Of a DNA stretch of 64,000 nucleotides, positions 995 to 53,767 are shown in pieces. Made by a program: the position numbers and the translations under genes. The notes beneath the pieces were generated by a model. The model did not search any database and was not told where the DNA came from. It was given only the letters and a program-made list of their open reading frames with translations. Every line of letters begins with the position of its first letter. Within the stretch, counting starts at the first letter, position 1. The DNA lies in IMG/VR virus record IMGVR_UViG_3300042473_001265, positions 62,001 to 126,000 of that record; one strand, 5' to 3'.

Positions 995-2529
995 ACATAA
1001 ATGATATCATTACAGAATCACAACAAAAATGTCCGCACTGTGGTGGACCTGTGGTGGAATATTCAGAACTAGGCGAGGGCAAAAAAGATGCCTGCTACTA
1101 CAAGGTCAAGGCATCGGCCAAAGTATGGCCCAGTGCCTATGCATCCGGTCGATTAGTTCAGTGTCGCAAAAAAGGTGCTGCCAACTATGGCAACAAGTCA
1201 GAAGGTGTGGCGGAAGGCTTATTAAACGAATTCGCACCAGGTGGAGCTGAAGGTGCTGGACCATATGCATATGGTATAGCTCTAAAAGAAATGGCAAAAT
1301 TGTATGCTGAAGGTGAGTTTGATTTAGTTGACGTCAGCGGCATGGACACAACAAGTCAAAACCAAAGTGATGCCGAAGAAATAAACAGCGTAGCAGATGC
1401 TTTTATCAATCGTGGAATGGAAGCTGGTAGAGAAGCATACCGCATGGTTGACACCATGGTGCAAGAGGACATGGATGAATACCTTGACGGCCAAGGATTC
1501 AATGTTGATGCTGATATCCATGTTGCATACAAAAATGACGTTGACCGTTATAATGCTTCTCCAGAGGGTCAGGCAGGAATCGCTGCGCATGAGGCTCGAC
1601 GAGAAGCCTGGCGGCGGTCAAAGCCGGCCAACCAAGTGATAATACAAGCAATTGATCCCAAAGGCAATTTGCCCATTGACAACACTCGCGTAGTGTTTGA
1701 TGCTAGAGAGTTTAACCTTGAGCCTGGCTTTCTTAAATACTCAATTGAACAAGATATTAAAAAGATCAAAAAGACAGCACCCGGTAGCTTGATTCAAATC
1801 ACCTTGGGCGGCAAACCAACTGATATTCAGGGTATTCTTGACCAATATAAACAGCTCAGCAAGGGGCCACACGATGTGGCGGAAAACTTTGCTGATGGGC
1901 GAAATCCCCAAGACAAGGGCGATGCCAAGCGTCACGGTATCAACACCAAGGCCAGTGTAAGCAGTCTACGCAAAACTGCCAAGCAAGGTGGACGCAAGGG
2001 ACAACTGGCACACTGGCTGGCCAACATGAAATCAGGCCGAGCCAAAAACGAAGGTGTGACAGAAAACACCGAGCCAGAAATGTTGTTCTACGCCAAATTG
2101 CCAGAGGGCACAAAAGTATATGCACGAGTAAAAGATGAACAGCAGTTGGCCAATCTACAACAACAGTATCGCGGCGCTGAAATCAAGACTTTTGATTTTC
2201 AGCGTCCTGATGTGCAGAAATGGCTGGAGGCCCGCAGAATCAATCTACGCAAATTTACACCGGGTATGGTACAAACCATGTATGATGTGATGGAAGCAGC
2301 ACACACCACCAATTTTAACGACGACGACTGGTATGAAATCAATCCTGACACCAAGACCATTGTGAGTCAGCGCGGGCCGCAGGCATATCACATGCCGTTT
2401 GGACAGCGACAGATCACCCTGCCCAATGGCAACATAGTTGTCAGAGGCATGCGAGCCAAAGGCATGGGTCTGGACACCGGACTTGGCAAACCGCAACAGA
2501 AAGAAGACGGTACCTGGGGCGCACTGTAA
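991..2529 (+). CDS. modular phage polyprotein, putative virion-internal protein
   Basis: ATGA-coupled start MNINDIITE. Modules separated by GVAEG, LNEF, VAEN, VTEN and VMEA junctions. Confidence 0.7.
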   Translation: MNINDIITESQQKCPHCGGPVVEYSELGEGKKDACYYKVKASAKVWPSAYASGRLVQCRKKGAANYGNKSEGVAEGLLNEFAPGGAEGAGPYAYGIALKEMAKLYAEGEFDLVDVSGMDTTSQNQSDAEEINSVADAFINRGMEAGREAYRMVDTMVQEDMDEYLDGQGFNVDADIHVAYKNDVDRYNASPEGQAGIAAHEARREAWRRSKPANQVIIQAIDPKGNLPIDNTRVVFDAREFNLEPGFLKYSIEQDIKKIKKTAPGSLIQITLGGKPTDIQGILDQYKQLSKGPHDVAENFADGRNPQDKGDAKRHGINTKASVSSLRKTAKQGGRKGQLAHWLANMKSGRAKNEGVTENTEPEMLFYAKLPEGTKVYARVKDEQQLANLQQQYRGAEIKTFDFQRPDVQKWLEARRINLRKFTPGMVQTMYDVMEAAHTTNFNDDDWYEINPDTKTIVSQRGPQAYHMPFGQRQITLPNGNIVVRGMRAKGMGLDTGLGKPQQKEDGTWGAL

Positions 2530-20827: not shown

Positions 20828-21407
20828 TAAGATTCTAAAATTTGAACATGCGCTGGCAGAGTTCACCGGCGCACCTTATGTGATCATGACCGATTGCTGC
20901 ACACATGCCATCGAACTTTGTCTACGCTATGACCGGATACGAAGCTGTAGTTTTACAGCATTTACCTATCTGAGTGTGGCCATGACCATGCACAAACTGG
21001 GCATCAAGTACGGCCTGGAAAACGAAGTCTGGACCGGTGAGTATCACATTCATGACACTCGAATCTGGGACAGTGCTAGACGACTGGAAAAGAACATGTA
21101 TCGACCTGGTGCCATGCAGTGCTTGAGTTTTGGACACGGTAAACCCCTGCATATTGGTCGTGGTGGTGCCATCTTGTTGGATGATCCAGCAGCATACGAG
21201 ATCATGATTCGTCAACGCTATGATGGACGCGACCTAAATACATCACCCTGGCAAGCACAACACACATTTCAAGTTGGATATCACTACAAGCCCACGCCCG
21301 AAGAAGCTGTTCAAGGTCTGGCCATGTTGGAAGGAATCAAGGACCAAGGCTGTGTGCCTGTGCATGTCGCTTACCCAGACCTAAGAACTATTACCATAGT
21401 AGATTGA
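20820..21407 (+). CDS. short DegT/DnrJ/EryC1/StrS-like PLP-dependent protein
   Basis: FEHALAEFTGA..CTHAIEL and SFGHGKPLHIGRGG with the PLP lysine; only about 195 aa. Confidence 0.65.
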   Translation: MFDKILKFEHALAEFTGAPYVIMTDCCTHAIELCLRYDRIRSCSFTAFTYLSVAMTMHKLGIKYGLENEVWTGEYHIHDTRIWDSARRLEKNMYRPGAMQCLSFGHGKPLHIGRGGAILLDDPAAYEIMIRQRYDGRDLNTSPWQAQHTFQVGYHYKPTPEEAVQGLAMLEGIKDQGCVPVHVAYPDLRTITIVD

Positions 21408-21432
21408 CTTTGCAGTCTAAATACTATACAAT
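21404..21432 (+). promoter_or_regulatory. sigma70-type promoter for folE
   Basis: TTGACT-N17-TATAAT. Confidence 0.65.
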
Positions 21433-21472
21433 CAACAAAAGCAATCCACTGCGTCAACATCGGAGAAAAAGT

Positions 21473-22171
21473 ATGGACACAAGTAAAAATTTAGCACAGG
21501 TGCTTCGCGAACGAATGCAAGCCGACAACAAGCGTTTCTGGGCTGGTGATAACATCAGCGAGTATGTTAAAGATGAGTTTGACAAGAACTATCTTATTGA
21601 AGAGGCAACTGTAGCGTTTGAGGGTGTACTCGATGCACTGTTAATTGATCGTGAGAATGATCCTAATAGCAAAGGTACAGCACGCCGCCTTGCTAAAATG
21701 TACTTCAATGAAATTATGGCAGGTAGATATGAACCAGCACCAGATGCAACCGCTTTCCCAAATGATTCGGCAGACCGTTACGAAGGTATGTTGGTGGTTA
21801 GAAGTGAGCTTCGTAGTATGTGTAGTCATCATCATCAGCCTGTGTCCGGTGTGGCTTATATCGGAATCATTGCTGCTCAAAAACTTATTGGTCTTAGCAA
21901 GTACACTCGCATTGCTCAGTGGTGTGCCCGTCGCGGTACATTACAGGAAGAACTCTGCAATGACATTGCACGAGAAATCTCCAAAGCAACTGAAAGCGAC
22001 AATGTAGCAGTGTATCTTGAAGCGGAACATGGCTGCTGCACCAATAGAGGAATAATGGCGCACAGTAGTCTGACACAGACCACAGTGCTCAAAGGTGCAT
22101 TCAAGGACGACAAAGGAACAAAGAAGGAATTCTTTGACAATATCTTGCTTCAGTCAAGAAACGGTAATTAA
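21473..22171 (+). CDS. folE: GTP cyclohydrolase I
   Basis: SMCSHHHQP, GLSKYTR, QEEL, HGCC..RG and TKKEF motifs; ATG at 21473 with GGAG SD. Confidence 0.95.
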   Translation: MDTSKNLAQVLRERMQADNKRFWAGDNISEYVKDEFDKNYLIEEATVAFEGVLDALLIDRENDPNSKGTARRLAKMYFNEIMAGRYEPAPDATAFPNDSADRYEGMLVVRSELRSMCSHHHQPVSGVAYIGIIAAQKLIGLSKYTRIAQWCARRGTLQEELCNDIAREISKATESDNVAVYLEAEHGCCTNRGIMAHSSLTQTTVLKGAFKDDKGTKKEFFDNILLQSRNGN

Positions 22172-29480: not shown

Positions 29481-30356
29481 ATGTTCGGAACAAACGAAAT
29501 CATTGGCAAGAAGTACTTTAAAGACGCACAAGAAAACACCTTGATGGTGACCAGTATGTTCTTTACCTTACAAGGTGAAGGACCCTATGCTGGCTTGCCA
29601 GCACTGTTTATTCGACTGGCCAAATGCAACTTGGATTGCAGTTTCTGTGACACATTCTTTGATGACGGTGATGTGTTCACCTATGCAGAACTGGAACAAA
29701 AGGCACATGAAACTATTCGCGACTTTTGGGTCAGCAAAGGCAAACCAGTGCCTGAGTGGGCAGTGCGGGATCGCAACGACTATCCCGGAGTTGTTCTGGT
29801 AATGACTGGCGGCGAACCCTTGCTGCAAGACAACATCTCGGGATGGATGAAACGACAGTTGTTGCACTACAAAGCAGTGCAGGTTGAAAGCAACGGCATA
29901 CCTGACACAGATGTGCCTACTGGTGTCACACTGGTGTGTTCGCCCAAATGCATTGAGAAGAATGGCAAGGCTGTCAAGTATCTTGCACCCAGTAAAACTA
30001 TTTTAGACCGTGCAGACTGTTTGAAGTTTGTTGTAACTGCCGATGCGGAATCACCTTACAACACAGTTCCAGACTGGGCATTTGAATGGAAACAGCGCAA
30101 CCCCAACAAGGAAGTTTACTGTAGCCCAATGAACGTCTACAACAGTTTTCCACAGAAGATCAAATTGTTGCGAGCAGAGAAAGGCCAAATAACCATGGCT
30201 GAACGCAGCACTGTGGATGAAGTGATTAGTTTTTGGGAACCAGGGCTGTTGAACTTGGCTGACAACCAACGCAATCATGAATATGTGGGGCAGTTTTGTA
30301 TAGAGAATGGGTTCAAGTTGAACTTGCAGCAGCATCTATACACAAGTTTGGCATAA
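29481..30356 (+). CDS. queE: 7-carboxy-7-deazaguanine synthase (radical SAM)
   Basis: FFTLQGEGPYAG, FIRLAKCNLDCSFCDT, TGGEPLLQ, VESNG, SPK and LNLQQH motifs. Confidence 0.92.
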   Translation: MFGTNEIIGKKYFKDAQENTLMVTSMFFTLQGEGPYAGLPALFIRLAKCNLDCSFCDTFFDDGDVFTYAELEQKAHETIRDFWVSKGKPVPEWAVRDRNDYPGVVLVMTGGEPLLQDNISGWMKRQLLHYKAVQVESNGIPDTDVPTGVTLVCSPKCIEKNGKAVKYLAPSKTILDRADCLKFVVTADAESPYNTVPDWAFEWKQRNPNKEVYCSPMNVYNSFPQKIKLLRAEKGQITMAERSTVDEVISFWEPGLLNLADNQRNHEYVGQFCIENGFKLNLQQHLYTSLA

Positions 30357-39005: not shown

Positions 39006-39095
39006 GGAAGCGTGGCAGAGTCCGGTTTATTGCAGCAGTCTTGAAAACTGCCGGCTCGAAAGGGTCCGTGAGTTCGAATCTCACCGCTTCCACCA
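39006..39095 (+). tRNA. tRNA-Ser(TGA)
   Basis: Cloverleaf with long variable arm, loop CTTGAAA, encoded CCA. Confidence 0.95.
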
Positions 39096-39104
39096 ATGCA
39101 ATTT

Positions 39105-39179
39105 GCGGCCATAGTATAACGGATAATACAGCGGTCTTCTACACCGTGAATGTGGGTTCGATTCCTGCTGGCCGCGCCA
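39105..39179 (+). tRNA. tRNA-Arg(TCT)
   Basis: Loop CTTCTAC, T-loop GGTTCGATTCC, CCA. Confidence 0.93.
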
Positions 39180-39184
39180 AACAT

Positions 39185-39270
39185 GCCCCCATAGACAAAT
39201 TGGTAAAGTCACTCTCCTCAAAAGGGAGTATTTTAAAAAAATCTGAGTTCGAATCTCAGTGGGGGCACCA
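39185..39270 (+). tRNA. tRNA-Leu(CAA)
   Basis: Loop CTCAAAA, AT-rich variable arm, CCA. Confidence 0.9.
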
Positions 39271-39311
39271 ATGGTTGACAAAGATCAACAAACAAGTTAT
39301 AATAGAACAAT

Positions 39312-39398
39312 GCTCTGATGGTGAAATAGGTAGACACAAGAGACTTAAAATCTCTCGCTCGCAAGGGTGTGCCGGTTCGATTCCGGCTCGGAGCACCA
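39312..39398 (+). tRNA. tRNA-Leu(TAA)
   Basis: Loop CTTAAAA, long variable arm, CCA. Confidence 0.95.
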
Positions 39399-39441
39399 TT
39401 TAAATAAGTCAGTTAATCAAGTTAAATTAAAGAAAGCAATC

Positions 39442-39615
39442 ATGACCCCAACAAAAACTTTTAAGTTCAGCAAGCGCAACAAAACATTGATGACCTTGCT
39501 GCCATTCAAAGATCAAACCATACGCAATGCGTTCAAGCGCATGATGGTTGATGCACAGCTATGCAGCGGTGTTGTTGTCAAAAGCAGCAAGGATCGTGGC
39601 ACAGATAGCAAGTAA
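39442..39615 (+). CDS. small basic hypothetical protein within the tRNA block
   Basis: 57-aa ORF MTPTKTFKFSKRNK... between two Leu tRNAs. Confidence 0.55.
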   Translation: MTPTKTFKFSKRNKTLMTLLPFKDQTIRNAFKRMMVDAQLCSGVVVKSSKDRGTDSK

Positions 39616-39623
39616 AGATATAT

Positions 39624-39700
39624 GCCCTGGTGGTGAAATTGGTAGACACAGCGGTCTTAGAAGCCGTAAGCTGAGAGTTCGAGTCTCTCCTAGGGCACCA
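39624..39700 (+). tRNA. tRNA-Leu(TAG)
   Basis: Loop CTTAGAA, short variable arm, CCA. Confidence 0.9.
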
Positions 39701-39722
39701 AGTATATAAAAGCAATCACACT

Positions 39723-40196
39723 ATGCCAAAATGTTATCAACTGATCGGAGTGCCTGCATCGGGCAAAACCACTTGGTACCGTAACCAAGAGTGGTTGGGT
39801 GAAGATAAAAAAGATCACAAGTATGTGTCCACAGATCAGCATGTGGAAGGATATGCCAATGATCAAGGCAAAACCTACAGTGAAGTGTTTGAGGAATACA
39901 TGCCCACTGCTGTCAAACAGATGCTGATAAATGTTAACATGGCTGCGGCATATCAGTTAGATATTGTTTGGGATCAGACCAGCACCACAGTTAAAAGCCG
40001 TCGAAAGAAGTTTGTTGAGTTGCCCAACTATGAGCACATTGCTGTGGTATTTCGGACACCCGATGCACCGGAACATGCTCGCAGATTAAACAGTCGTCCG
40101 GGCAAGCACATTCCTGATGAAATAGTACAAGATATGATCATCAAATTTGAAATGCCTACCGAAGAAGAAGGGTTTGTTGAAATCTGGCATGTGTAA
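39723..40196 (+). CDS. P-loop kinase (AAA_33 / polynucleotide-kinase-like)
   Basis: LIGVPASGKTT and IVWDQTS..R motifs. Confidence 0.85.
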   Translation: MPKCYQLIGVPASGKTTWYRNQEWLGEDKKDHKYVSTDQHVEGYANDQGKTYSEVFEEYMPTAVKQMLINVNMAAAYQLDIVWDQTSTTVKSRRKKFVELPNYEHIAVVFRTPDAPEHARRLNSRPGKHIPDEIVQDMIIKFEMPTEEEGFVEIWHV

Positions 40197-40203
40197 TACT
40201 GGG

Positions 40204-40689
40204 TTAGGCTCTGGATAGCATTACCAGGCTGAGAAAAAATGCCGGAATTGCAATGGCCACAAAACAAGAAAACACAAGAAATGTTTGTAATATGTCTTCT
40301 TGTGCTTTGCGATTGGCTGCTGCCATTTTTCTTTCAACTTCTGCTCGTTCTTTGTACATACGCACTCGCTCGGACTGCATTTGATCCCAGACATCTTTGT
40401 TGCCGGACCAGATCAGCATTTCTTTAAGTTCTTTTTCAGCGTCCCGCAGTGCTTTGCTGTGCATGGCAGTTTGCAAAGATCTTGAAGCAATTTCTCCATT
40501 GCTCAGCAAAGAAGTAGAATTCATCAGCTTGACATTGGCCACATAAACTTTGTCGCAATTTTGAAAAAATGAACTAAACTGTCCGTATAAGCTGTTGATG
40601 TCTTTGCCCATGGCAATGGCTTTTTTAATGCCGCCAATTGCTTGCTGTGCCGCAGTGAATGCCAGGCCAATTGTCACAGGGTCAATCAT
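40204..40689 (-). CDS. hypothetical protein with hydrophobic termini
   Basis: 161-aa ORF MIDPVTIGLAF..., coupled to 40686-40880. Confidence 0.6.
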   Translation of the reverse strand: MIDPVTIGLAFTAAQQAIGGIKKAIAMGKDINSLYGQFSSFFQNCDKVYVANVKLMNSTSLLSNGEIASRSLQTAMHSKALRDAEKELKEMLIWSGNKDVWDQMQSERVRMYKERAEVERKMAAANRKAQEDILQTFLVFSCFVAIAIPAFFLSLVMLSRA

Positions 40690-40880
40690 GATCGTAGAAT
40701 ATAAGGTTTAAATTGCTTTTCCCAGCGTCGACACCAAACTTCTCTATTGGGAGCTTGGCCCGACCAACTCCACAGTGTACACACCCATTGTTCATTCTTG
40801 TCTAATTTTTCCGTTGGTGGTGCCACAGCATTTAATGCTGTAGAGCCTGCCAACAACACAAACAACAAAGAATATTTCAT
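40686..40880 (-). CDS. small secreted hypothetical protein
   Basis: Signal-peptide-like N-terminus and a WVCTLWSW..WCRRW motif. Confidence 0.55.
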   Translation of the reverse strand: MKYSLLFVLLAGSTALNAVAPPTEKLDKNEQWVCTLWSWSGQAPNREVWCRRWEKQFKPYILRS

Positions 40881-40926
40881 TTACTATATTTAACTATAGT
40901 ACGATATAATTACAACAGCCGTTTGA

Positions 40927-40955
40927 TTGACTGCAAAGCCACAATCTGCTATAAT
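40927..40955 (+). promoter_or_regulatory. sigma70-type promoter
   Basis: TTGACT-N17-TATAAT before the phosphoesterase gene. Confidence 0.7.
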
Positions 40956-40986
40956 ATAGGTTACAACGCAAGAAAAGGAGGGCAAG

Positions 40987-41589
40987 ATGCCTAGTGTATT
41001 TTTAGTCAGCGACACGCACTTTGGACACATGGGTGTATGCCGCTTTACCCGCAACGATGGTGTCACCAAATTACGCCCGTGGGATAGTGCTGAGGAAATG
41101 GACGAAGCCATGGTCACGGCCTGGAACAAACGAGTTAAACCCACGGACAAGGTATATCACTTGGGTGATGTGGTTATAAACCGCAAAGCATTAAAGACTC
41201 TGGCCAGATTGAACGGCGACAAGGTGTTAATCCGTGGCAACCATGATATCTTCCGTGATGAAGAGTATCGTGAATACTTTCGTGAATTACGGGCGTACCA
41301 TGTGATGAACGGCATGATCCTTAGCCACATTCCTGTACACAGTGACAGCTTGGGGCGTTTTGGCGTCAACATACACGGACATACTCACGCAAATCGTGTA
41401 CGCAAAGCCCGTGGAGTTGATGCTAGAACTGGTGAAATCTTGTACAGCGACGAGATTGATCCACGCTATCATTGTGTATGCGTGGAACAGACTGACTTTG
41501 CACCGATACTGTTTGAAGATGTGATCAAACGCATCGAAGCAGAAGGTGGGTCAGTGGGTTTTCGTAACGGCAATGGTCCTACAATGTAG
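40987..41589 (+). CDS. calcineurin-like metallophosphoesterase
   Basis: SDTHFGH, HLGDVV, IRGNHD, LSHIP and HGHTH motifs. Confidence 0.92.
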   Translation: MPSVFLVSDTHFGHMGVCRFTRNDGVTKLRPWDSAEEMDEAMVTAWNKRVKPTDKVYHLGDVVINRKALKTLARLNGDKVLIRGNHDIFRDEEYREYFRELRAYHVMNGMILSHIPVHSDSLGRFGVNIHGHTHANRVRKARGVDARTGEILYSDEIDPRYHCVCVEQTDFAPILFEDVIKRIEAEGGSVGFRNGNGPTM

Positions 41590-41604
41590 GCCTGGAATTT
41601 TAAA

Positions 41605-41682
41605 GTAGCGGTGGCAGAGAGGCCCAATGCAAGGGATTGCAAATCCCTAAAACCGTGAGTTCGAATCTCACCCGCTACTCCA
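41605..41682 (+). tRNA. tRNA-Cys(GCA)
   Basis: Loop TTGCAAA, U73, CCA. Confidence 0.93.
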
Positions 41683-41803
41683 GTTAATTCACAGTTGAAT
41701 TTTAAAGAGTAAATAGAGTAGTCAGAGTGCAGGCTCTTTTTAAATCCTGCCTTTGTGTGGTACCGAGCAATGCTCCTGCTTGTATAAGCATCGGTACACT
41801 ATT

Positions 41804-41877
41804 GCGGGATTCGTAAAATGGTATTACCTTAGATTTCCAATCTAAAGTCGGGGGTTCGATTCCCCCATCCCGCTCCA
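41804..41877 (+). tRNA. tRNA-Gly(TCC)
   Basis: Loop TTTCCAA, U73, CCA. Confidence 0.93.
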
Positions 41878-41906
41878 GTTTTTATGTTGATCGATTTGAG
41901 AAAATT

Positions 41907-42407
41907 ATGCAAACCATTAATCTTGTAAAAGTAAAACAATTCATAGAAGCACAAGGCCCAATGACTCGCATCTATTTGGGTTGCGACAGCGAACGAATCC
42001 GAATCAACAACGAATGGTGGGCCGATTACACACTGGCCATTGTGGTGCATATCAACGGCAACAGCGGATGCAAGATATTTGGCGAAGTGTGCCGCGAGCG
42101 TGACTATGATCAAAAAACTGCACGGCCCAGCATGCGACTGATGAACGAAGTGTACAAAGTTTCTGACATGTATCATCGGCTGGGCGAAGTGCTGAACGGC
42201 CGAGAAGTGGAAGTACACTTGGACATCAATCCAGACGAACGCCACGGATCCAGCTGTGTGATTGCACAGGCCATTGGCTATATAAAAGGAACCTGCAACA
42301 TAACACCATTGGTCAAACCCGAAGCGTTTGCTGCCAGTTATGCTGCGGATCGCTTCAAAGGATTGGCCACTGCACGACATCGTGTTCGAGTCAATGAACG
42401 AGTTTAG
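41907..42407 (+). CDS. RNase H-like YkuK/DUF458 family protein
   Basis: IYLGCDS, RLMNEVYK, EVHLDIN and AASYAAD pattern. Confidence 0.75.
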   Translation: MQTINLVKVKQFIEAQGPMTRIYLGCDSERIRINNEWWADYTLAIVVHINGNSGCKIFGEVCRERDYDQKTARPSMRLMNEVYKVSDMYHRLGEVLNGREVEVHLDINPDERHGSSCVIAQAIGYIKGTCNITPLVKPEAFAASYAADRFKGLATARHRVRVNERV

Positions 42408-42494
42408 GAAGTGTGGCTGAGTGGCCTAAGGCAGCTGATTACTAATCAGTCATATCGCAAGGTATCGTGGGTTCGAATCCTACCACTTCCGCCA
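42407..42494 (+). tRNA. tRNA-Ser with the rare anticodon ACT
   Basis: Ser-type long variable arm and G73; stem GCTGA/TCAGT with loop TTACTAA; CCA. Confidence 0.85.
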
Positions 42495-42500
42495 ATGTTA

Positions 42501-42526
42501 AAAAGGCTACTTTGATAGCCTTTTTT
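42501..42526 (+). terminator. intrinsic terminator after tRNA-Ser(ACT)
   Basis: AAAAGGCTA-ctttga-TAGCCTTTTTT. Confidence 0.7.
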
Positions 42527-42561
42527 CTTGACTTTTAAACAAAAGGCATATATAATACACT

Positions 42562-42660
42562 ATGATTACGCAAATCACATTCACTGCTAACAACACGCCG
42601 GCCATCTATGAGATAGCCTATGAGCGTGATTGTCCCAGGGGTCTTTGCCATTGTAGTTAA
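42562..42660 (+). CDS. leader peptide 2 (32 aa) of a putative tRNA-operon attenuator
   Basis: MITQITFTANNTPAIYEIAYERDCPRGLCHCS; TATAAT at 42549 suggests a near-leaderless start. Confidence 0.7.
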   Translation: MITQITFTANNTPAIYEIAYERDCPRGLCHCS

Positions 42661-42682
42661 CAAAAGTACTACATTCACAAAG

Positions 42683-42707
42683 ACCCGCTAACTAGGCGGG
42701 TTTTTTT
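42683..42707 (+). terminator. attenuator terminator 2
   Basis: ACCCGC-taactag-GCGGGT plus T6; GGGTCTTTG (42639) pairs perfectly with CAAAGACCC (42678), which overlaps the stem. Confidence 0.8.
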
Positions 42708-42717
42708 ATGGCGCTGG

Positions 42718-42746
42718 TAGACACAAAATCGCATCAGTGCTATAAT
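42718..42746 (+). promoter_or_regulatory. sigma70-type promoter of tRNA block 2
   Basis: TAGACA-N17-TATAAT. Confidence 0.65.
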
Positions 42747-42760
42747 ACACACATAACAGC

Positions 42761-42801
42761 AGCAAACGATCGAGTAGCTGAAGAGAATTCTTTAAAAATT
42801 T
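42761..42801 (+). promoter_or_regulatory. boxB-like hairpin plus boxA-like element
   Basis: AGC-AAACGATCGAGTA-GCT, then TTCTTTAAAAATTT resembling rrn boxA (TGCTCTTTAACAATTT). Confidence 0.55.
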
Positions 42802-42830
42802 ACTAATATTTTTTCTTGCTACGGCAAGAA

Positions 42831-42964
42831 ATTATATTGAAACACATTTTCAATCTGAATTGACAGATACAAACAACCAAGGGGAGCCGCTGGACTTGAG
42901 CCAGGTTCATCCTGAATTGACAGGAACAAGGTTGTAAGGGGAGCCGAGTGCGTTTCAATATAAT
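42831..42964 (+). ncRNA. inverted-repeat-bounded RNA cassette with an internal direct repeat
   Basis: ATTATATTGAAACAC...GCGTTTCAATATAAT arms; two CTGAATTGACAG...AAGGGGAGCCG units inside. Confidence 0.55.
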
Positions 42965-42970
42965 AAATTT

Positions 42971-43045
42971 GGAGCATTCGTCTATCGGTTAGGACAGTGG
43001 GTTTTCAGTCCACTAAGAGCGGTTCGACTCCGCTATGCTCTACCA
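42971..43045 (+). tRNA. tRNA-Glu(TTC)
   Basis: Loop TTTTCAG, CCA. Confidence 0.92.
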
Positions 43046-43052
43046 TGTTTTT

Positions 43053-43139
43053 GGATGTGTAGGAAAATTGGTAACCCCAGGAGACTGTAAATCTTCCGTC
43101 GTAATGGCATTGTTGGTTCAAGTCCAACCTCATCCACCA
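43053..43139 (+). tRNA. tRNA-Tyr(GTA)
   Basis: Loop CTGTAAA, variable arm, CCA. Confidence 0.93.
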
Positions 43140-43142
43140 AAT

Positions 43143-43370
43143 ATTTCTCGTCAGAGCCCTAATGCAAATCCTGTGGGCGATGAATTAACAAGGCTGCATA
43201 GATGCTTGCAGTATATTGTCGGTGAAGTTCCGACCGGGAAACGAAATCAAGTGGAAAGCAAGAGCCACAAAGTAAACACCGCCGGGTCAGAAAATGTGTC
43301 CGGGACGTATGGGTCGCGCAGCCTATACAAACAACGGTGGGGTAAGAGTCCTCATAACATTTTCACAAAT
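43143..43370 (+). ncRNA. unidentified multi-hairpin RNA candidate
   Basis: Hairpins GCCC/GGGC, CTGCA/TGCAG, GTCGG/CCGAC, GTGG/CCAC and CACCG/CGGTG between two tRNAs. Confidence 0.4.
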
Positions 43371-43373
43371 TTA

Positions 43374-43448
43374 GGTGCGTTCATATAACGGTCATTATCC
43401 TGGATTGTCTATCCAGAGACGGGAGTTCGACTCTCCCACGCATCGCCA
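43374..43448 (+). tRNA. tRNA-Asp(GTC)
   Basis: Loop TTGTCTA, G73, CCA. Confidence 0.92.
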
Positions 43449-43456
43449 AGTTAACA

Positions 43457-43533
43457 GGCCCTTAGCTCATGTTGGTTAGAGCAGCAGACTCATAATCTGT
43501 TGGTGCTGTGTTCGACTCACAGAGGGCCTACCA
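43457..43533 (+). tRNA. tRNA(CAT), probably Ile2 (lysidine type)
   Basis: Loop CTCATAA; GGCCCTT acceptor resembles E. coli ileX. Confidence 0.8.
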
Positions 43534-43539
43534 AGTTTT

Positions 43540-43712
43540 GGTTAGTTGGAAATGAAAGTAACCCAAAGGGAGCGCTCTGAACAGGCGCTGCTTAGTACGC
43601 CTTACAAAAGTAATTGTCCTGACTGTTCGACCCAAGAGGTGTTTACCCGTAGATTAAGTTCCTACGCTCTCGCTCAAGGGATGTCGCTGTGTCGCAACAG
43701 CACTAACCACCA
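43540..43712 (+). ncRNA. 173-nt RNA with a tRNA-like acceptor stem, T-like arm and ACCA end
   Basis: GGTTAGT/ACTAACC 7-bp stem plus A-CCA; GCTGT-gtcgca-ACAGC hairpin directly before the 3' strand. Confidence 0.5.
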
Positions 43713-43777
43713 AGTTTAAGAGTTCGTCTAGAAACCGGTAAATTGTAGTTTGGTCTACAAGCTCTTAATTAGTTTAT

Positions 43778-43870
43778 GGTGTCATAGGATGTAACGGGGT
43801 GCGGTTTGCCTCAACCTTGAATGATCATCAAGGTTTTCTTGCGTGGGTTCGAATCCCACATGATGCCCCA
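43778..43870 (+). tRNA. atypical tRNA-like RNA with a non-canonical core
   Basis: GGTGTCA/TGATGCC acceptor, canonical T arm GTGGG-TTCGAAT-CCCAC and CCA; central 8-bp AACCTTGA/TCAAGGTT hairpin. Confidence 0.55.
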
Positions 43871-43941
43871 AATTTGCAGTTTTTGTCTGGAGTAATATTC
43901 CTGGACACGGATAAAAACAGAAATGTTCTGCGCCAAGTTAT

Positions 43942-44011
43942 GCCCTGGACTGTGTTGCGAGTCAGATTTGAAGCTGAACGTAGACAGGTTTAATTCCTGT
44001 TAGGGGCGCCA
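43942..44011 (+). tRNA. degenerate tRNA with a reduced D arm, identity unclear
   Basis: T arm ACAGG-TTTAATT-CCTGT, GCCA end, imperfect acceptor and anticodon arms. Confidence 0.4.
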
Positions 44012-44014
44012 AGT

Positions 44015-44238
44015 TTTGTTAGAGTGTTAGCAAGAGAAAGTCACGCTGTCTAGGTTTCTTCGAAGGACCAAAACAGTAGAAGGTTGCGGGTTCGATGCCC
44101 GGCTGATCGCTTGAGTGGGATCGGCATACATGACGGCGTATCAACTGGACCGGTATCCCAAGTAACTTACCGACTCCCGCTCGAGCTTGTTAATTCGGGT
44201 GAATGGCAGCAATAACGTGGTGCTGCTACTCTAACAAA
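44015..44238 (+). ncRNA. 224-nt structured RNA candidate closed by an 11-bp stem
   Basis: TTTGTTAGAGT/ACTCTAACAAA; internal hairpins and a T-loop-like GGGTTCGATGCCC. Confidence 0.45.
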
Positions 44239-44246
44239 TTCAATAT

Positions 44247-44336
44247 GCCAGCGAGACTTGGAGTCCGAGGGGTCTTATATGCCCTTTCCGCCAGATTAGC
44301 GGCTTTGAGAGAGTTCGATTCTCTCCGCTGGTACCA
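44247..44336 (+). tRNA. tRNA with anticodon TAT (nominal Ile), long variable arm and minimal D loop
   Basis: GCCAGCG/CGCTGGT-A-CCA; loop CTTATAT; CCGC/GCGG variable arm; D arm GACT-tgg-AGTC. Confidence 0.75.
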
Positions 44337-44378
44337 GATCGTGTTGGATAAACTTTTTATCAGTTTATCCAAAACAAT

Positions 44379-44407
44379 TTGACAAGCAAAGATGTTTGTC
44401 ATACAAT
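44379..44407 (+). promoter_or_regulatory. sigma70-type promoter with a palindromic spacer
   Basis: TTGACA-N17-TACAAT; TGACAAGCA/TGTTTGTCA inverted repeat. Confidence 0.7.
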
Positions 44408-44420
44408 AGATACTTACTTG

Positions 44421-44526
44421 ATATTGTTGAGCACATTAGCCTGACTGAAACGGGCATCGAGTACGTGGGGCGTGAAAGAAGGTTCGATTCCTTCATACTC
44501 AATTTCAGTGGTGTGTTCAACAATAT
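44421..44526 (+). ncRNA. inverted-repeat-bounded RNA cassette with a T-arm-like hairpin
   Basis: ATATTGTTGAGCACATT...GGTGTGTTCAACAATAT; internal GAAGG-TTCGATT-CCTTC. Confidence 0.55.
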
Positions 44527-44547
44527 AAAGTTTGGTAAAATTAGGTG

Positions 44548-44576
44548 TTGACAAGTTCAACAGTTGATGTTACAAT
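44548..44576 (+). promoter_or_regulatory. sigma70-type promoter of the large ncRNA
   Basis: TTGACA-N17-TACAAT. Confidence 0.75.
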
Positions 44577-44582
44577 AAGATT

Positions 44583-45476
44583 CCGGGGCAGTTTAATGTC
44601 CTACTAGGCAGCTTGCTGTCTAGTGAAGAATAACTGTGGTGACACAGCCAAAGGAGGTATGCCTACATAACTCCGCCAGCAACGGTTCGTTTAGACAAGC
44701 CTGCTCAGACTCGCGAGAGTCCCTTCACTGATAAGACCGGTGGAGGTAACAATGACGCTGGATGTTGTGGAAAGAACGTCGGCTTACCGGCCCGCAAGGG
44801 TAACCGGAGCAGATGGAAAGTAACAGGTGGTGCTGACTTCACAACAAAACCAGTCCAGTTAATTGGCATGAGAAAGGGTAGTGTATCGGTCCGAGGGGTT
44901 GCACCCAAGGGCTTGTATGCAGTTTGAGTGGTCAGTGGAGGCTGTCGAAAGGCGGGGTCAACACAGATCGCAAAAGACGTCTGAGTAGTTCGCAAGACAA
45001 AAGGAACGTGGTGTGTTGTATTGTGTAGAGCAAAACTTTATGCAGCAACTGAGTCAGCACATCGCAGTAGGTTCGTTATAGCTCAATTGGTAGAGCAACT
45101 CCCTGTTAAGGAGTAGGCAGACGGTTCAAATCCATCTAACTATTAAAAAGCAAAGACTGACTCGGTCGTATGTGAAAAGCATCTAATACTTGGCTCGCAA
45201 GAGAATCAAGTCAGACGTAACTCGCAAGGTGAAATCTGTTTATGCAGGAAGTTTCGTAACTGTTTAGCGACAGTGAATGGCTCTAAAGGTCAACGGGATA
45301 GAAAGCGTAGAATAGCATATGGCGACAAGACTACTGCCTGTCTTTAAAAACGGCGATGCTGGCAACAGACCAGGAAACCTGCAAGGGTCTTGGTGGAAGT
45401 CGGAAGAAAGCGGTCTCGCAAGGATCGTAATAATGTCCGAGGTGTTGTTGGGTAAGCATGTATTCTCAGTGCTCCA
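44583..45476 (+). ncRNA. large (about 0.9 kb) structured RNA, GOLLD-like
   Basis: No credible ORF; own promoter; many GCAA/GAAA tetraloop hairpins; tRNA-array location. The GAGTAG..GCAAG..AAAGGAACGTGGTGTGTTGTATT segment resembles GOLLD as I recall it. Confidence 0.6.
45072..45144 (+). pseudogene. degenerate tRNA-Asn(GTT) embedded in the large ncRNA
   Basis: D arm TAGCTCAATTGGTAGAGC, ACTCC-CTGTTAA-GGAGT and T-loop GGTTCAAATCC; broken acceptor stem, no CCA. Confidence 0.65.
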
Positions 45477-45477
45477 C

Positions 45478-45538
45478 TATTCTAAAACACATTAAGCTGA
45501 TGCGGGCTGCAATGCCGCAGATAGTGTGTTTCAGAATA
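45478..45538 (+). ncRNA. inverted-repeat-bounded RNA cassette
   Basis: TATTCTAAAACACATTA...TAGTGTGTTTCAGAATA. Confidence 0.55.
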
Positions 45539-45552
45539 GATAAATAAACTAC

Positions 45553-45628
45553 CGCGGGAAGGGTCCGGTCACCGGCAGGGTCTCATAAGCCTTCGCAATC
45601 CTTGGTTCAAATCCAAGTCCCGCTACCA
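45553..45628 (+). tRNA. tRNA(CAT), probably initiator fMet
   Basis: CGCGGGA/TCCCGCT with an unpaired first position; loop CTCATAA; CCA. Confidence 0.75.
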
Positions 45629-45646
45629 ATAACAAATCATCGGTGG

Positions 45647-45675
45647 TTGACACAGAATGATAAATAACATACAAT
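45647..45675 (+). promoter_or_regulatory. sigma70-type promoter (with embedded ATAAATA) for leader 3
   Basis: TTGACA-N17-TACAAT. Confidence 0.75.
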
Positions 45676-45682
45676 AGGATTT

Positions 45683-52445: not shown

Positions 52446-53767
52446 TAGAGTTACTGTATCTATTACCAATCATACTGCTTGGCATAGCCAGCGGCATTGT
52501 GATCGGCGTATTTCCCGGAGTAGGACCTGCATCAGGAATAATGATCTTGTATCCTGTTTTGCTCGGGTTGCCGGTGGTGGATTTGTTTGTATTTTATTCA
52601 GTGATGATGTCTTCAGTGCAGTACTACAGCAGCATACCATCTATTGTGTATGGCATAGCCGGAGAAATCACCAGTGTGCCAGCGGTGCAGTATGGCCATG
52701 ATGAATTCAGGCAAGGGCGTGGTGCAGAACTACTAAGCGCCACGGCCACATCCAGTCTGATAGCATCGGTTGTGGGTGTTGTGATTTTTTATGCAGCCAC
52801 ACAGTACATTGATTTTATGAAGTACTTTATCAACAACACTCCAAGATTGATATTGTTAACTGTGCTTGTTGTGTTGATCAGTGTGGCCAGCAAACAAAAG
52901 ATCCTGGCACTGACATTTGCAATTATAGGACTGACGATTGGACACATTGGGTACGATGTTTTGAGGCGCGAACATTTTTTATCCGCAGCAGATTTTCTGC
53001 CCAGTGGCATTCCGTTTGTACCGGTGTTCATTGGATTTCTAATGTTGCCAGAGTTATTTCATCATGCAAGGCATACCTTATCCGGTGTTGACATCAATTC
53101 GAATGAGTTTGGTATTCGTACTCGGCTAGCAAATTTATTAAAATTTCCACCGGTGCTGTCATCCCTGCGTGGATCCGTGATAGGTGCTGTGATGGGCCTG
53201 GTGCCTATGATAGGAACATCTGTGTCGTCAATGGTTGCAGCAGTGGTGGAAAAAAAGATCAACAACAACAATCAACGAATAGTGGTTTCTGCAGAGGCTG
53301 CCAACAATTCAGCTGCCATCACTGTGTTGATACCATTGATATTTCTAGCATTGCCTATTATTCCATCCGAAGCAGTGATCATGGCCTTGGCCGAACGCAG
53401 CGGATTTGGAATCAACAACAGTTTCAATTTGATAGCATCACTGGCTGGACCATTGATTGTGATACTGTTACTGGTCAATGTGGTCAATTGGTTGGTTGCC
53501 GGAATGTTTTATCAAAGTATGATTTCCCTCTACATTCGGTTGAACAAGATAATTTATCCCATCCTGATTGCAGTAAGCGTGGCAGTGTGTGTTTCAGAAG
53601 GAATGGCCAACCACCAACTGGGTCTGTATCTGTTGTTGACTGCCATGTCGGTATGTGTTGGGGTTTTTGTCAAAGAGTTTTCTGTTCGCGTCGCACTGAT
53701 ATTTGGCATGCTTTTGTCAACGTCAGTATCATCGGAAATTTTCCGATTTGTATTATTCAACTTTTAA
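52442..53767 (+). CDS. TctA-like tripartite tricarboxylate transporter membrane subunit
   Basis: About 12 TM segments; GVFPGVGP, GEITSVPA and AEAANNSAA..LIPLIFLALP motifs. Confidence 0.8.
   Translation: MIELLYLLPIILLGIASGIVIGVFPGVGPASGIMILYPVLLGLPVVDLFVFYSVMMSSVQYYSSIPSIVYGIAGEITSVPAVQYGHDEFRQGRGAELLSATATSSLIASVVGVVIFYAATQYIDFMKYFINNTPRLILLTVLVVLISVASKQKILALTFAIIGLTIGHIGYDVLRREHFLSAADFLPSGIPFVPVFIGFLMLPELFHHARHTLSGVDINSNEFGIRTRLANLLKFPPVLSSLRGSVIGAVMGLVPMIGTSVSSMVAAVVEKKINNNNQRIVVSAEAANNSAAITVLIPLIFLALPIIPSEAVIMALAERSGFGINNSFNLIASLAGPLIVILLLVNVVNWLVAGMFYQSMISLYIRLNKIIYPILIAVSVAVCVSEGMANHQLGLYLLLTAMSVCVGVFVKEFSVRVALIFGMLLSTSVSSEIFRFVLFNF

What the first reader, a model, noticed from the sequence alone, without database searches (positions are those of the whole stretch)
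43540..43712. 173-nt RNA with tRNA-like ends but an unrelated interior
Seen: a 7-bp acceptor-like stem (GGTTAGT/ACTAACC) with A-CCA and a T-arm-sized hairpin just before the 3' strand. About 140 nt of hairpins replace the D and anticodon arms. It starts 6 nt after the CCA of the preceding tRNA. Inference: a substrate for RNase P and CCA-end enzymes and possibly chargeable, acting as a tRNA mimic, a tmRNA-like or Y-RNA-like molecule, or a decoy.
Basis: partly seen in the sequence, partly recalled or inferred. Interest (0 to 1): 0.62.

Follow-up and report, generated by a model that had tools for sequence, protein, structure and literature searches.

The report
Phage tRNA-like RNA, new family
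A 173-base gene in a tRNA slot of a giant phage's tRNA cluster encodes an RNA whose ends fold like the top half of a tRNA around a different, extremely conserved middle of unknown function; it founds a new RNA family built like the still-unexplained 'species 1' RNA of phage T4.

Summary
Window 43540-43712 has a 7-bp acceptor-like stem, discriminator A, CCA, and a 5-bp hairpin abutting the 3' strand. It starts 6 nt after the CCA of tRNA-Met.

It is a real RNA family. I found 39 distinct versions (167-174 nt) in viral and metagenome contigs. All lie in tRNA arrays on the tRNA strand, mostly 5-7 nt after a preceding ...CCA end.

Compensatory changes support the acceptor stem, the T-like hairpin and an interior hairpin. 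No reading frame is conserved.

The roughly 70-nt interior core is about 96% identical across phages whose same-anticodon tRNAs are only 55-74% identical.

It is not a tRNA, an intron-bearing tRNA, a tmRNA or a Y RNA. It has no Rfam or ARAGORN match, no G3:U70, no conserved tag frame and a variable discriminator.

Best reading: a stable non-decoding RNA cut out of the tRNA transcript by tRNA-processing enzymes, using the acceptor/T minihelix as a handle. Its invariant, probably pseudoknotted interior would bind a conserved partner that is still unknown.

The closest analogue is T4 rnaC, by architecture only. I rate it a new variant of a known kind.

The parts
43534..43539 (+). 6-nt spacer (AGTTTT) between the CCA of tRNA-Met and G+1 of the element. 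U at -1.
   Evidence: In 37 of 39 family members the -1 base is T, and 33 of 38 relatives have a ...CCA end 5-7 nt upstream.
43540..43546 (+). P1 5' strand (acceptor-like stem, GGTTAGT)
   Evidence: Pairs with 43702-43708. 99.6% of cells paired across 39 sequences, with double changes at pairs 2 and 3. G1 is invariant.
43547..43557 (+). Conserved single-stranded joiner UGGAAAUGAAA. G9, G10, A11, A12 and A13 are invariant. Proposed stand-in for the D loop, contacting the U and C of the T-like loop.
   Evidence: Invariant columns. The tertiary contact is inferred. T4 rnaC carries AGGAAAU at the same positions.
43558..43605 (+). Variable domain closed by a short helix Px (GTAA 43558-43561 with TTAC 43602-43605). 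It contains a small hairpin (43562-43570) and hairpin P2.
   Evidence: The Px pair types GT/AC, GC/GC and AT/AT alternate among family members (read by eye). Domain sequences differ between subtypes, but its length stays at 45-50 nt.
43571..43589 (+). P2 hairpin: stem 43571-43577 with 43584-43589 and an invariant loop UGAACA (43578-43583).
   Evidence: All 7 stem pairs show double changes. TGAACA is invariant in 39 of 39.
43611..43683 (+). Near-invariant core. Proposed helices:
- P3: GAC 43621-43623 with GTC 43683-43685.
- P4: CCC 43631-43633 with GGG 43678-43680.
- P5: AGAG 43635-43638 with CTCT 43667-43670.
- P6: CGTAG 43648-43652 with CTACG 43662-43666, loop 43653-43661.
   Evidence: - 57 of 70 columns are invariant and mean identity is 96%.
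- All proposed pairs are pairable in all 39 members, but they do not vary, so covariation cannot test them.
- One compensated change exists: A-U to G-C at the middle pair of P3, in L171 and L211.
- Variable positions fall in the proposed loops and linkers.
43624..43629 (+). TGTTCG (UGUUCR in the family), complementary to the P2 loop UGAACA. Proposed pseudoknot, or a contact between two copies. It resembles a T-loop sequence (GTTCRA).
   Evidence: 6 of 6 pairable in 39 of 39; the only variation is U-A against U-G. Duplex energy is -7.5 kcal/mol. Inferred, not proven.
43686..43701 (+). T-arm-like hairpin: 5-bp stem and a 6-nt loop RUCRYA, with U, C and the final A invariant. It abuts P1 with no gap.
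   Evidence: All 5 pairs show double changes; 99% of cells paired.
43702..43708 (+). P1 3' strand (ACTAACC)
43709..43712 (+). Discriminator A plus genome-encoded CCA
   Evidence: NCCA in 32 of 39 members; the others end CTA, CCT, CCG, CCC or TTT. The discriminator is A in 10 and U in 29.

Best explanation
This is the gene for a stable, non-decoding, tRNA-like RNA of about 170 nt. It founds a previously undescribed family carried in the tRNA arrays of a clade of roughly 340-kb phages.

Biogenesis (inferred). It is transcribed together with the neighbouring tRNAs. It is then released by the tRNA-maturation machinery:
- RNase P cuts before the invariant G+1.
- The 3' end is trimmed to the encoded NCCA, or CCA is added where it is not encoded.
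The 7-bp acceptor-like stem stacked on the 5-bp T-like hairpin, with the invariant GG of the joiner probably touching the invariant UC of the hairpin loop, acts as the processing and stability handle.

Working part (inferred). The D and anticodon arms are replaced by two elements:
- a variable domain that presents an invariant UGAACA loop;
- a near-invariant 70-nt core, probably locked together by a UGAACA:UGUUCR pseudoknot.
This interior is the functional part. It most likely binds a highly conserved partner: a host translation or RNA-processing component, a conserved phage factor, or another copy of itself. It does not read codons.

What is shown: the RNA-level structure of the two ends and of P2, the tRNA-slot position, and the extreme conservation. 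What is inferred: processing, the interior fold and partner binding.
For: Family and context:
- 39 distinct homologues of constant length, 167-174 nt.
- All 38 relatives lie in tRNA arrays on the tRNA strand, with no minus-strand tRNA in any locus.
- 28 of 38 lie 5-9 nt after an ARAGORN-called tRNA, and 5 lie 6-7 nt before the next one.
- The neighbouring tRNA types differ, so it behaves as an independent array unit.

Structure:
- Covariation supports P1, P2 and the T-like hairpin (15 pairs with double changes, 0 of 500 shuffles).
- Stops occur in all six frames in nearly all members, and lengths differ by non-multiples of three, so it is not coding.

Conservation:
- Core identity is 96%, against 55-74% for same-anticodon tRNAs in the same contigs.
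- 37 of the 51 core columns outside the search word are invariant.
- The acceptor helix itself is nearly constant (GTCTAGT), while the tRNA acceptor stems in these phages vary freely.

Processing features:
- G+1, U-1, a 12-bp stack and encoded NCCA are the bacterial RNase P and CCA determinants (a 7-bp acceptor stem is called a major RNase P determinant in PMC4201824).
- Promoter-like sites lie upstream at 42528-42556 and 42718-42746. No terminator-like site lies on the + strand between there and 44336.

Precedent: T4 rnaC is a stable RNA at the end of the T4 tRNA cluster, with an acceptor-like stem and a T arm around an unrelated interior.
Against: - There are no expression or end-mapping data; processing is inferred.
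- The T-like loop has 6 nt and lacks the T-loop consensus, so an elbow contact is uncertain.
- 7 of 39 members do not encode CCA.
- The interior helices and the pseudoknot do not vary, so covariation cannot test them.
- My comparative model scores -31.2 kcal/mol for its nested part plus about -7.5 for the pseudoknot, which is less stable than the window-specific MFE of -44.4.
- The MFE z-score is 0.05.
- Members were collected through an exact 19-mer in the core. This forces invariance of those 19 columns and biases the sample toward close relatives.
- No partner was identified. No protein family lies within 4 kb in more than 6 of 39 loci.
Confidence: 0.6

Rival explanations
1. It is an aminoacylatable tRNA mimic that acts in translation. 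For example, it could be a minimal tmRNA-like rescue or tagging RNA, or an aminoacyl donor for a non-ribosomal transfer. It would be charged on its CCA end by a host or phage synthetase.
For: - Free acceptor end with NCCA in 32 of 39, and G1-C72.
- The general layout (acceptor stem, joiner without a D stem, T-like arm, and everything else emerging where the anticodon arm would be) is that of the tmRNA tRNA-like domain.
- The acceptor helix sequence is unusually constant, as if read by a specific enzyme.
- The phage invests heavily in translation RNAs: 30 tRNAs plus its own tmRNA.
Against: - No G3:U70; pair 3:70 is C-G or U-A.
- The discriminator switches between A and U.
- No conserved open frame or resume/stop arrangement.
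- No ARAGORN tmRNA or tRNA model has these ends, even at relaxed thresholds, and there is no Rfam match.
- The window's tRNAs already cover all 20 amino acids, and a complete permuted tmRNA is present.
- No SmpB or synthetase was found among about 40 scanned ORFs.
Confidence: 0.12
2. It is a decoy or sponge that titrates a tRNA-binding host factor. Candidates are an anticodon or acceptor nuclease of an anti-phage system, or a tRNA-modifying or quality-control enzyme. The tRNA-like top half would be the bait and the core a trap.
For: - tRNA-like handle with a strongly conserved acceptor helix.
- Location among phage tRNAs. From my own knowledge, not checked here, phage tRNAs are thought to counter tRNA-targeting defences.
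- Several other non-canonical tRNA-like units lie beside it.
Against: - P2 is not an anticodon-arm mimic. Covariation closes a 6-nt loop, and stem length varies.
- Extreme core conservation across diverged phages fits a universal partner better than a variable defence protein.
- There is no direct evidence at all.
Confidence: 0.13
3. It is a cis-acting part of the tRNA transcript with no function as a free RNA. It could be a processing spacer, a transcript-stability element, a self-cleaving ribozyme, or a DNA-level recombination cassette that shuffles array units.
For: - Units in these arrays are clearly shuffled, and the ...CCA-AGTT(T/A) junctions recur.
- In L169 and L172 the same element is followed by a different unit.
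Against: - Compensatory changes show selection on RNA pairing, not on DNA.
- The exact tRNA-slot spacing and encoded NCCA argue for release as a tRNA-sized product.
- No known ribozyme family matches at E<=10.
- A spacer would not need a 70-nt invariant core.
Confidence: 0.07
4. It is a degenerate, intron-containing or otherwise aberrant tRNA gene.
For: tRNA slot, acceptor stem, CCA, and a GTTCRA T-loop-like string inside the core.
Against: - ARAGORN allowing introns of 0-200 nt, or relaxed to 70-80% thresholds, gives no model with these ends.
- The Rfam tRNA model is silent at E<=10.
- No D stem can be drawn.
- The interior is more conserved than real tRNAs, the opposite of decay.
- At about 97 nt, the interior beyond a tRNA's length is too short for a group I intron (my own knowledge, not tested here).
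Confidence: 0.03
5. It is a Y-RNA-like (YrlA-type) RNA that tethers a Ro60 protein.
For: YrlA RNAs contain a tRNA-like module and occur in some phages. M. smegmatis YrlA is cut by RNase P and receives CCA (PMC4201824).
Against: - The topology is the reverse. Here the termini form the acceptor stem; in Y RNAs the termini form the Ro60-binding stem.
- No GNCGAAN0-1G motif.
- No Ro60/TROVE hit among about 40 scanned window ORFs, and no conserved neighbouring protein.
- No Rfam Y RNA match.
Confidence: 0.02

Closest known systems
Phage T4 species 1 RNA (rnaC, 139 nt; NC_000866 70908-71046)
   Same: - A stable RNA encoded inside or at the end of a phage tRNA cluster, on the tRNA strand.
- An acceptor-like 7-position stem whose 3' strand directly follows a T arm, with a long unrelated interior of hairpins.
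- The motif WGGAAAU at positions 8-14, right after the acceptor 5' strand, in both.
- Its function was still called unknown in 2022 (PMC9697503).
   Different: - No detectable homology. The family model R1 does not align to rnaC; its only hit inside rnaC is a 28-nt fragment at 0.8 bits, E 9.1.
- T4 rnaC has a canonical 7-nt T loop (UUCGAAU), two U:U mismatches in the stem and no encoded CCA. It is 34 nt shorter.
- The invariant core and the UGAACA loop are absent.
tmRNA tRNA-like domain
   Same: Acceptor stem with a free NCCA end, a joiner without a D stem carrying a GG, a T-type arm stacked on the acceptor stem, and the rest of the molecule emerging where the anticodon arm would be. It is an RNase P substrate (PMC11143913; PMC3985003 abstract).
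   Different: No G3:U70, no tag reading frame, a 6-nt rather than 7-nt T loop, and about half the size. Neither ARAGORN nor Rfam recognises it. The phage has a separate complete permuted tmRNA at 49393-49676.
Bacterial and phage Y RNAs (YrlA)
   Same: [quoted passage not shown]
   Different: In Y RNAs the 5' and 3' ends form the Ro60-binding stem and the tRNA-like part is internal; here the ends are the acceptor stem. No Ro60 gene and no GNCGAAN0-1G motif.
GOLLD and ROOL RNAs
   Same: Structured phage RNAs of unknown function that sit near or in tRNA islands (PMC12286853). A GOLLD lies 1.3 kb downstream in this window. A loop-to-strand complementarity could in principle act between copies.
   Different: They are several-fold larger and have different folds and sequences. 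They lack acceptor/CCA ends of their own. The element gave no Rfam match.
tRNA-like processing handles (mascRNA-type 3' modules, plant-virus tRNA-like structures, mitochondrial t-elements)
   Same: A partial tRNA mimic is used so that RNase P and CCA-end enzymes define RNA ends (PMC11143913 lists such RNase P substrates; PMC1920247 describes t-elements).
   Different: Those are appended to a larger mRNA, long non-coding RNA or viral genome. Here the handle closes the whole molecule, and the unit stands alone in a tRNA array.

Membership tests
tRNA (Rfam RF00005 / ARAGORN) | Match to the tRNA covariance model or to the ARAGORN cloverleaf search | tested here: not met
   No RF00005 match over 43540-43712 even at E<=10. 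ARAGORN finds nothing at default settings, with introns of 0-200 nt allowed, or at 70-80% thresholds with these ends.
tRNA (Rfam RF00005 / ARAGORN) | 7-bp acceptor stem, discriminator and CCA | tested here: met
   43540-43546 with 43702-43708, then A and CCA. The stem covaries.
tRNA (Rfam RF00005 / ARAGORN) | 5-bp T stem with a 7-nt T loop (UUCRANN) closed by G53-C61 | tested here: not met
   The stem is 5 bp and covaries, but the loop is 6 nt (RUCRYA) and the closing pair is U-A, U-G or G-C.
tRNA (Rfam RF00005 / ARAGORN) | D arm, and an anticodon arm with a 7-nt loop | tested here: not met
   No D stem can be drawn. P2 closes a 6-nt loop according to covariation of the Y:R pair, and its stem length varies.
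tmRNA | G3:U70 alanine identity pair in the acceptor stem | tested here: not met
   Pair 3:70 is C-G in 33 members and U-A in 6.
tmRNA | Tag-peptide reading frame with a resume codon and a stop | tested here: not met
   Stops in all frames in nearly all members; indels that are not multiples of three.
tmRNA | Recognition by ARAGORN or the Rfam tmRNA models | tested here: not met
   The relaxed ARAGORN tmRNA search returns only spurious permuted models with other ends.
Y RNA / YrlA | 5' and 3' termini pair to form the Ro60-binding stem | tested here: not met
   The termini form the acceptor-like stem with a free NCCA.
Y RNA / YrlA | Linked Ro60 (rsr/TROVE) gene | tested here: inconclusive
   None among about 40 window ORFs scanned with Pfam, and no conserved protein neighbour in 39 loci. 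The rest of the 340-kb genome was not examined.
Y RNA / YrlA | Conserved GNCGAAN0-1G motif (PMC4201824) | tested here: not met
   Absent from the family consensus.
T4 species 1 RNA (rnaC) | Sequence or structure homology | tested here: not met
   Model R1 with filters off does not align to rnaC. Its only hit inside rnaC is a 28-nt fragment at 0.8 bits (E 9.1), and the best hit in the 5-kb T4 region is 7.9 bits elsewhere. There is no Rfam family for rnaC to compare with.
T4 species 1 RNA (rnaC) | Architecture: a unit in a tRNA cluster, with an acceptor-like stem and adjacent T-type hairpin enclosing a non-tRNA interior | tested here: met
   for T4; for this family.
RNase P / CCA-enzyme substrate | Cleavage at G+1 and CCA maintenance in vitro or in vivo | not testable with these tools
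   Only the sequence determinants are present: G+1 in 39 of 39, U-1 in 37 of 39, a 12-bp stack, and NCCA in 32 of 39.

The most novel reading that the evidence does not exclude
The element is a new functional class of tRNA mimic. Its near-invariant acceptor helix would be read by a dedicated enzyme (charging, or a CCA-end modification). Its invariant pseudoknotted core would dock on the ribosome or another universal machine. This would let huge phages rewire host translation or disarm tRNA-directed defence. It might work together with the equally conserved ~220-nt neighbour at 44018-44236, as a two-RNA system parallel to T4 rnaD and rnaC.
Probability: 0.15. Interest if true: 0.85.

Novelty: new variant of a known kind. 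Interest (0 to 1): 0.6.

Why it matters
- Phage tRNA clusters have been known since the 1970s to carry extra stable RNAs, and the function of T4 RNAs C and D is still unknown.
- This family shows that the same design (tRNA-like ends around a foreign interior, in a tRNA slot) recurs in unrelated, uncultured huge phages.
- Here the design comes with a clear signature of purifying selection. The core is more conserved than the phage's own tRNAs, and even the acceptor helix sequence is fixed.
- That gives a tractable object of 170 nt, with a defined structure and 39 natural variants. It can be used to ask what such RNAs do and what they bind.
- It also adds to the picture, with GOLLD and ROOL, that phage tRNA islands are hot spots of unexplained structured RNAs.
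- It is a candidate new Rfam family.

Tried and rejected
- Rfam: gathering thresholds on the whole window, and E<=10 on 43100-45100. Nothing overlaps the element.
- ARAGORN at default settings, with introns, at relaxed thresholds, and in tmRNA and mitochondrial modes. No model has these ends.
- blastn against 50,697 cultured-phage records. Only the flanking tRNAs and GOLLD matched.
- nhmmer and covariance model R1 on 96 related tRNA-array loci (1.4 Mb) and on the T4 tRNA cluster. No diverged copies were found.
- Genome collection scan. The five exact 19-mer hits are chance matches, with nhmmer aligning only about 20-28 nt.
- Two loose viral patterns. Both were wasted scans.
- Protein-coding reading (the 57-aa TTG ORF at 43546-43719). 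Rejected: stops in all frames in relatives, frameshifting indels and compensatory changes.
- P2 as an anticodon-arm mimic with anticodon GAA. Rejected: the Y:R covariation closes a 6-nt loop, and loop size differs between subtypes.
- Pairing of the joiner YGAA with the core UUCR. Rejected: by eye on the alignment, the two variable positions do not correlate.
- Origin of the acceptor stem from one tRNA type. No consistent nearest tRNA.
- A dedicated neighbouring protein. None occurs in more than 6 of 39 loci.
- A strict link to the ~220-nt downstream element. It occurs in 12 fetched loci without this element, and 21 loci with this element show no hit to it.
- Literature search for T4 'species 1 RNA' found nothing, and the T4 genome review is not held.

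Full report
**Setting**

The window is part of a roughly 340-kb phage genome. It is identical to IMGVR_UViG_3300042473_001265 over the stretches compared. It encodes a family B DNA polymerase and many phage-type genes.

From 39006 to 49369 it carries 30 tRNA genes, all on the + strand and covering all 20 amino acids. The same region holds a GOLLD RNA (45008-45472, 197 bits) with an embedded tRNA-Asn, and a permuted tmRNA (49393-49676).

Between the tRNAs lie three genes:
- a polynucleotide-kinase-like ATPase;
- a phosphoesterase;
- an RNaseH-like protein of unknown function.

The finding lies in a 713-nt stretch without recognised tRNAs, between tRNA-Met (43456-43533) and an odd 90-nt tRNA-Ile(tat) (44247-44336).

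**The observation**

- GGTTAGT (43540-43546) pairs with ACTAACC (43702-43708).
- A43709 and CCA (43710-43712) follow.
- A 5-bp hairpin (GCTGT/ACAGC, 43686-43701) abuts the 3' strand with no gap.
- The unit starts 6 nt after the CCA of tRNA-Met.

The only correction is that the hairpin loop has 6 nt (GTCGCA), not the 7 nt of a T loop.

In a single sequence the pattern is weak evidence.
- The same pattern turns up about 4 times per 64-kb strand in shuffles, and 10 times on the minus strand.
- The element folds no better than shuffled versions (z = 0.05).

Its position in a tRNA slot is unlikely by chance; I estimate about 1%. The comparative data are decisive.

**Relatives**

I seeded exact-word scans from the part that stayed constant in the first four homologues. 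These recovered the element in viral and metagenome contigs. The result is 39 distinct sequences of 167-174 nt. None is in the cultured-phage collection at blastn sensitivity or in the bacterial genome collection.

When each locus is oriented by the element:
- every tRNA in every locus is on the same strand;
- 28 of 38 elements start 5-9 nt after an ARAGORN-called tRNA;
- 33 of 38 have a ...CCA end 5-7 nt upstream;
- 5 are followed 6-7 nt later by the next tRNA.

The flanking tRNAs differ between loci (Ala, Asp, Leu, Met, Gly, Val, Pro, Thr, Cys and others). The element therefore behaves as an independent cassette in the array, exactly like a tRNA gene.

Other family-wide features:
- The base at -1 is U in 37 of 39, and G+1 is invariant.
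- NCCA is encoded in 32 of 39; the rest end CTA, CCT, CCG, CCC or TTT.

**RNA structure**

On the 39-sequence alignment (A3), 93.9% of cells are paired, against 31-45% when the partners are slid. Fifteen pairs show changes on both sides, and 0 of 500 shuffles reach the observed covariation.

The well-supported helices are:
- **P1**, the acceptor-like stem. Pair 2 is UA, UG, GC or CG; pair 3 is CG or UA.
- **The T-like hairpin.** All five pairs covary, for example GCTGT/ACAGC, ATCGT/ACGAT, GTCCT/AGGAC and GCTAG/CTAGC.
- **P2**, an interior hairpin. All seven pairs covary, and it carries an invariant UGAACA loop.

A short helix Px (GTAA/TTAC in the window; GC/GC and AT/AT elsewhere) closes a variable domain of 45-50 nt (read by eye).

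No reading frame survives across the family.

After P1 comes an invariant GGAAA. The T-like loop has invariant U, C and a final A. I read this as a stand-in for the D-loop GG: T-loop UC elbow contact, as in tmRNA. That is inference.

**The core**

Positions 43611-43683 are almost frozen.
- 57 of 70 columns are invariant and mean identity is 96%.
- Same-anticodon tRNAs from the very same contigs are only 55-74% identical, with 11-41% invariant columns.
- The 19-mer used for the scans is invariant by construction. Even so, 37 of the other 51 core columns are also invariant.

I propose this fold:
- P3: GAC/GUC
- P4: CCC/GGG
- P5: AGAG/CUCU
- P6: CGUAG/CUACG, with a 9-nt loop

In addition, the strand UGUUCR between P3 and P4 would pair with the UGAACA loop of P2. 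The strand GAC-UGUUCR-A-CCC would then be paired along its whole length.

Evidence on this fold:
- All these pairs are possible in all 39 sequences.
- The few variable positions fall in the proposed loops and linkers.
- One A-U to G-C double change supports P3.
- Invariant pairs cannot be tested by covariation.
- The model (-31.2 kcal/mol nested, about -7.5 for the pseudoknot) is less stable than the window-specific MFE of -44.4 kcal/mol, which uses pairings that relatives lack.

**What it is not**

- **Not a tRNA or an intron-bearing tRNA.** The covariance model and ARAGORN, with introns or relaxed thresholds, find nothing with these ends. There is no D arm, and P2 is not an anticodon arm.
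- **Not a tmRNA.** It has no G3:U70 and no tag frame, and no tool recognises it. The phage has its own complete tmRNA.
- **Not a Y RNA.** The topology is reversed, the conserved motif is absent, and no Ro60 gene was found among the ORFs scanned (PMC4201824).
- **Chargeability has no support.** The discriminator is A in 10 and U in 29 members, and the acceptor stem resembles no particular tRNA type.

One feature stays unexplained. The acceptor helix sequence itself is nearly fixed (GTCTAGT in most members), while tRNA acceptor stems in these phages vary freely. This suggests that something reads this helix specifically, or that the core docks on it.

**Most likely mechanism**

The element is co-transcribed with its tRNA neighbours. 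Promoter-like sites lie at 42528-42556 and 42718-42746, and there is no + strand terminator-like site before 44336.

It is then excised by RNase P and 3'-end enzymes. Its 12-bp acceptor/T-like stack, G+1, U-1 and NCCA present the determinants these enzymes use. A 7-bp acceptor stem is described as a major RNase P determinant in PMC4201824, and RNase P is known to process tmRNA and other tRNA-like RNAs (PMC11143913).

The tRNA-like top half would thus serve as a handle for maturation and stability. The invariant interior is the functional surface. Its conservation beyond that of the phage tRNAs points to a highly conserved partner, or to a demanding tertiary fold that may include self-association. 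No dedicated protein gene travels with it.

**Closest known**

Phage T4 species 1 RNA (rnaC, 139 nt) sits at the end of the T4 tRNA cluster. It has an acceptor-like stem whose 3' strand follows a canonical T arm, and a long unrelated interior. It even shares WGGAAAU at positions 8-14 with this family. Its function was still called unknown in 2022 (PMC9697503).

There is no detectable homology. Model R1 does not align to rnaC; its only hit inside rnaC is a 28-nt fragment at 0.8 bits. The relation is one of design, not membership.

GOLLD and ROOL are the other structured RNAs typical of phage tRNA islands (PMC12286853).

**Verdict**

This is a genuine, previously uncatalogued structured RNA family: a new variant of the 'extra stable RNA in a phage tRNA cluster' kind. 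Its ends are well supported, its interior is only modelled, and its function is unknown. Interest 0.6.

Noticed in passing
window 44018-44236 (+): A second conserved RNA-like unit of about 220 nt.
- Its closing stem GTTAGAGT/ACTCTAAC covaries in relatives (GTTAAAGT/ACTTTAAC, TTGAGAGT/ACTCTCAA, TTGTAAGT/ACTTACAA).
- A covarying hairpin abuts its 3' strand.
- A conserved AAATTCA follows, with no CCA.
- It contains a T-arm-like string around 44084-44101.
- blastn finds it in 56 of 224 fetched loci, 12 of them without the 173-nt element. It is often directly downstream of that element.
- No Rfam match at E<=10.
   Followed up: partly
window 43779-43870 (+): A 92-nt tRNA-like unit: GTGTCAT/ATGATGC stem, then C and CCA, with a canonical T arm (GTGGG TTCGAAT CCCAC). 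ARAGORN calls it tRNA-Leu(caa) only at a 70% threshold, and the Rfam tRNA model is silent. It is absent from L169 and L172, where the 173-nt element is joined directly to the next unit.
   Followed up: partly
window ~43930-44011 (+): Another non-canonical tRNA-like unit, ending ACAGG TTTAATT CCTGT TAGGGGC G CCA. ARAGORN calls it tRNA-Leu(cag) only at a 70% threshold. A similar unit precedes the element in L181.
   Followed up: no
window 44247-44336 (+): ARAGORN's tRNA-Ile(tat) is 90 nt long. It scores only 23 bits against the Rfam tRNA-Sec model and is not found by the tRNA model. Similar 90-92-nt 'Ile(tat)' calls recur in related phages (L060, L080, L180).
   Followed up: no
window 45008-45472 (+): GOLLD RNA (Rfam 197 bits, full length) with tRNA-Asn (45071-45145) embedded in it. 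Promoter-like sites lie at 44379-44407 and 44548-44576 upstream.
   Followed up: no
window 49393-49676 (+): A phage-borne permuted (two-piece type) tmRNA lies immediately after tRNA-Pro. ARAGORN also calls permuted tmRNAs in several related contigs (L006, L007, L009, L016, L025, L060).
   Followed up: no
window 50186-51088 and 52442-53767 (+): Genes with Gram-negative porin (Porin_4) and TctA tricarboxylate-transporter domains lie just past the tRNA array of a phage contig. They are possible host-derived auxiliary genes and a clue to a Gram-negative host.
   Followed up: no
window 39723-42407: Three genes sit inside the tRNA array: a polynucleotide-kinase-like AAA_33 ATPase (39723-40196), a calcineurin-like phosphoesterase (40987-41589) and an RNaseH-like PF04308 protein (41907-42407). 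They may be an RNA-repair or RNA-processing set. The phosphoesterase and the RNaseH-like protein each have many relatives in viral contigs (101 and at least 599 confirmed stretches).
   Followed up: partly
window 43140-43373 (+): A 234-nt gap between tRNA-Tyr and tRNA-Asp has no ORF support. It is conserved at 91-100% in 10 related loci and could be a further non-coding unit.
   Followed up: no
L225 (T4 NC_000866) 1409-1547 (-): T4 rnaC folds far better than shuffled versions (z = -4.6) and has AGGAAAU directly after its acceptor-like 5' strand. That is the same motif and position as in the new family. rnaC and rnaD have no Rfam family.
   Followed up: partly
window 21404-22171 and 29481-30356 (+): GTP cyclohydrolase I and a radical-SAM protein. 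Together they are compatible with a 7-deazaguanine modification pathway (my own inference, not tested).
   Followed up: no
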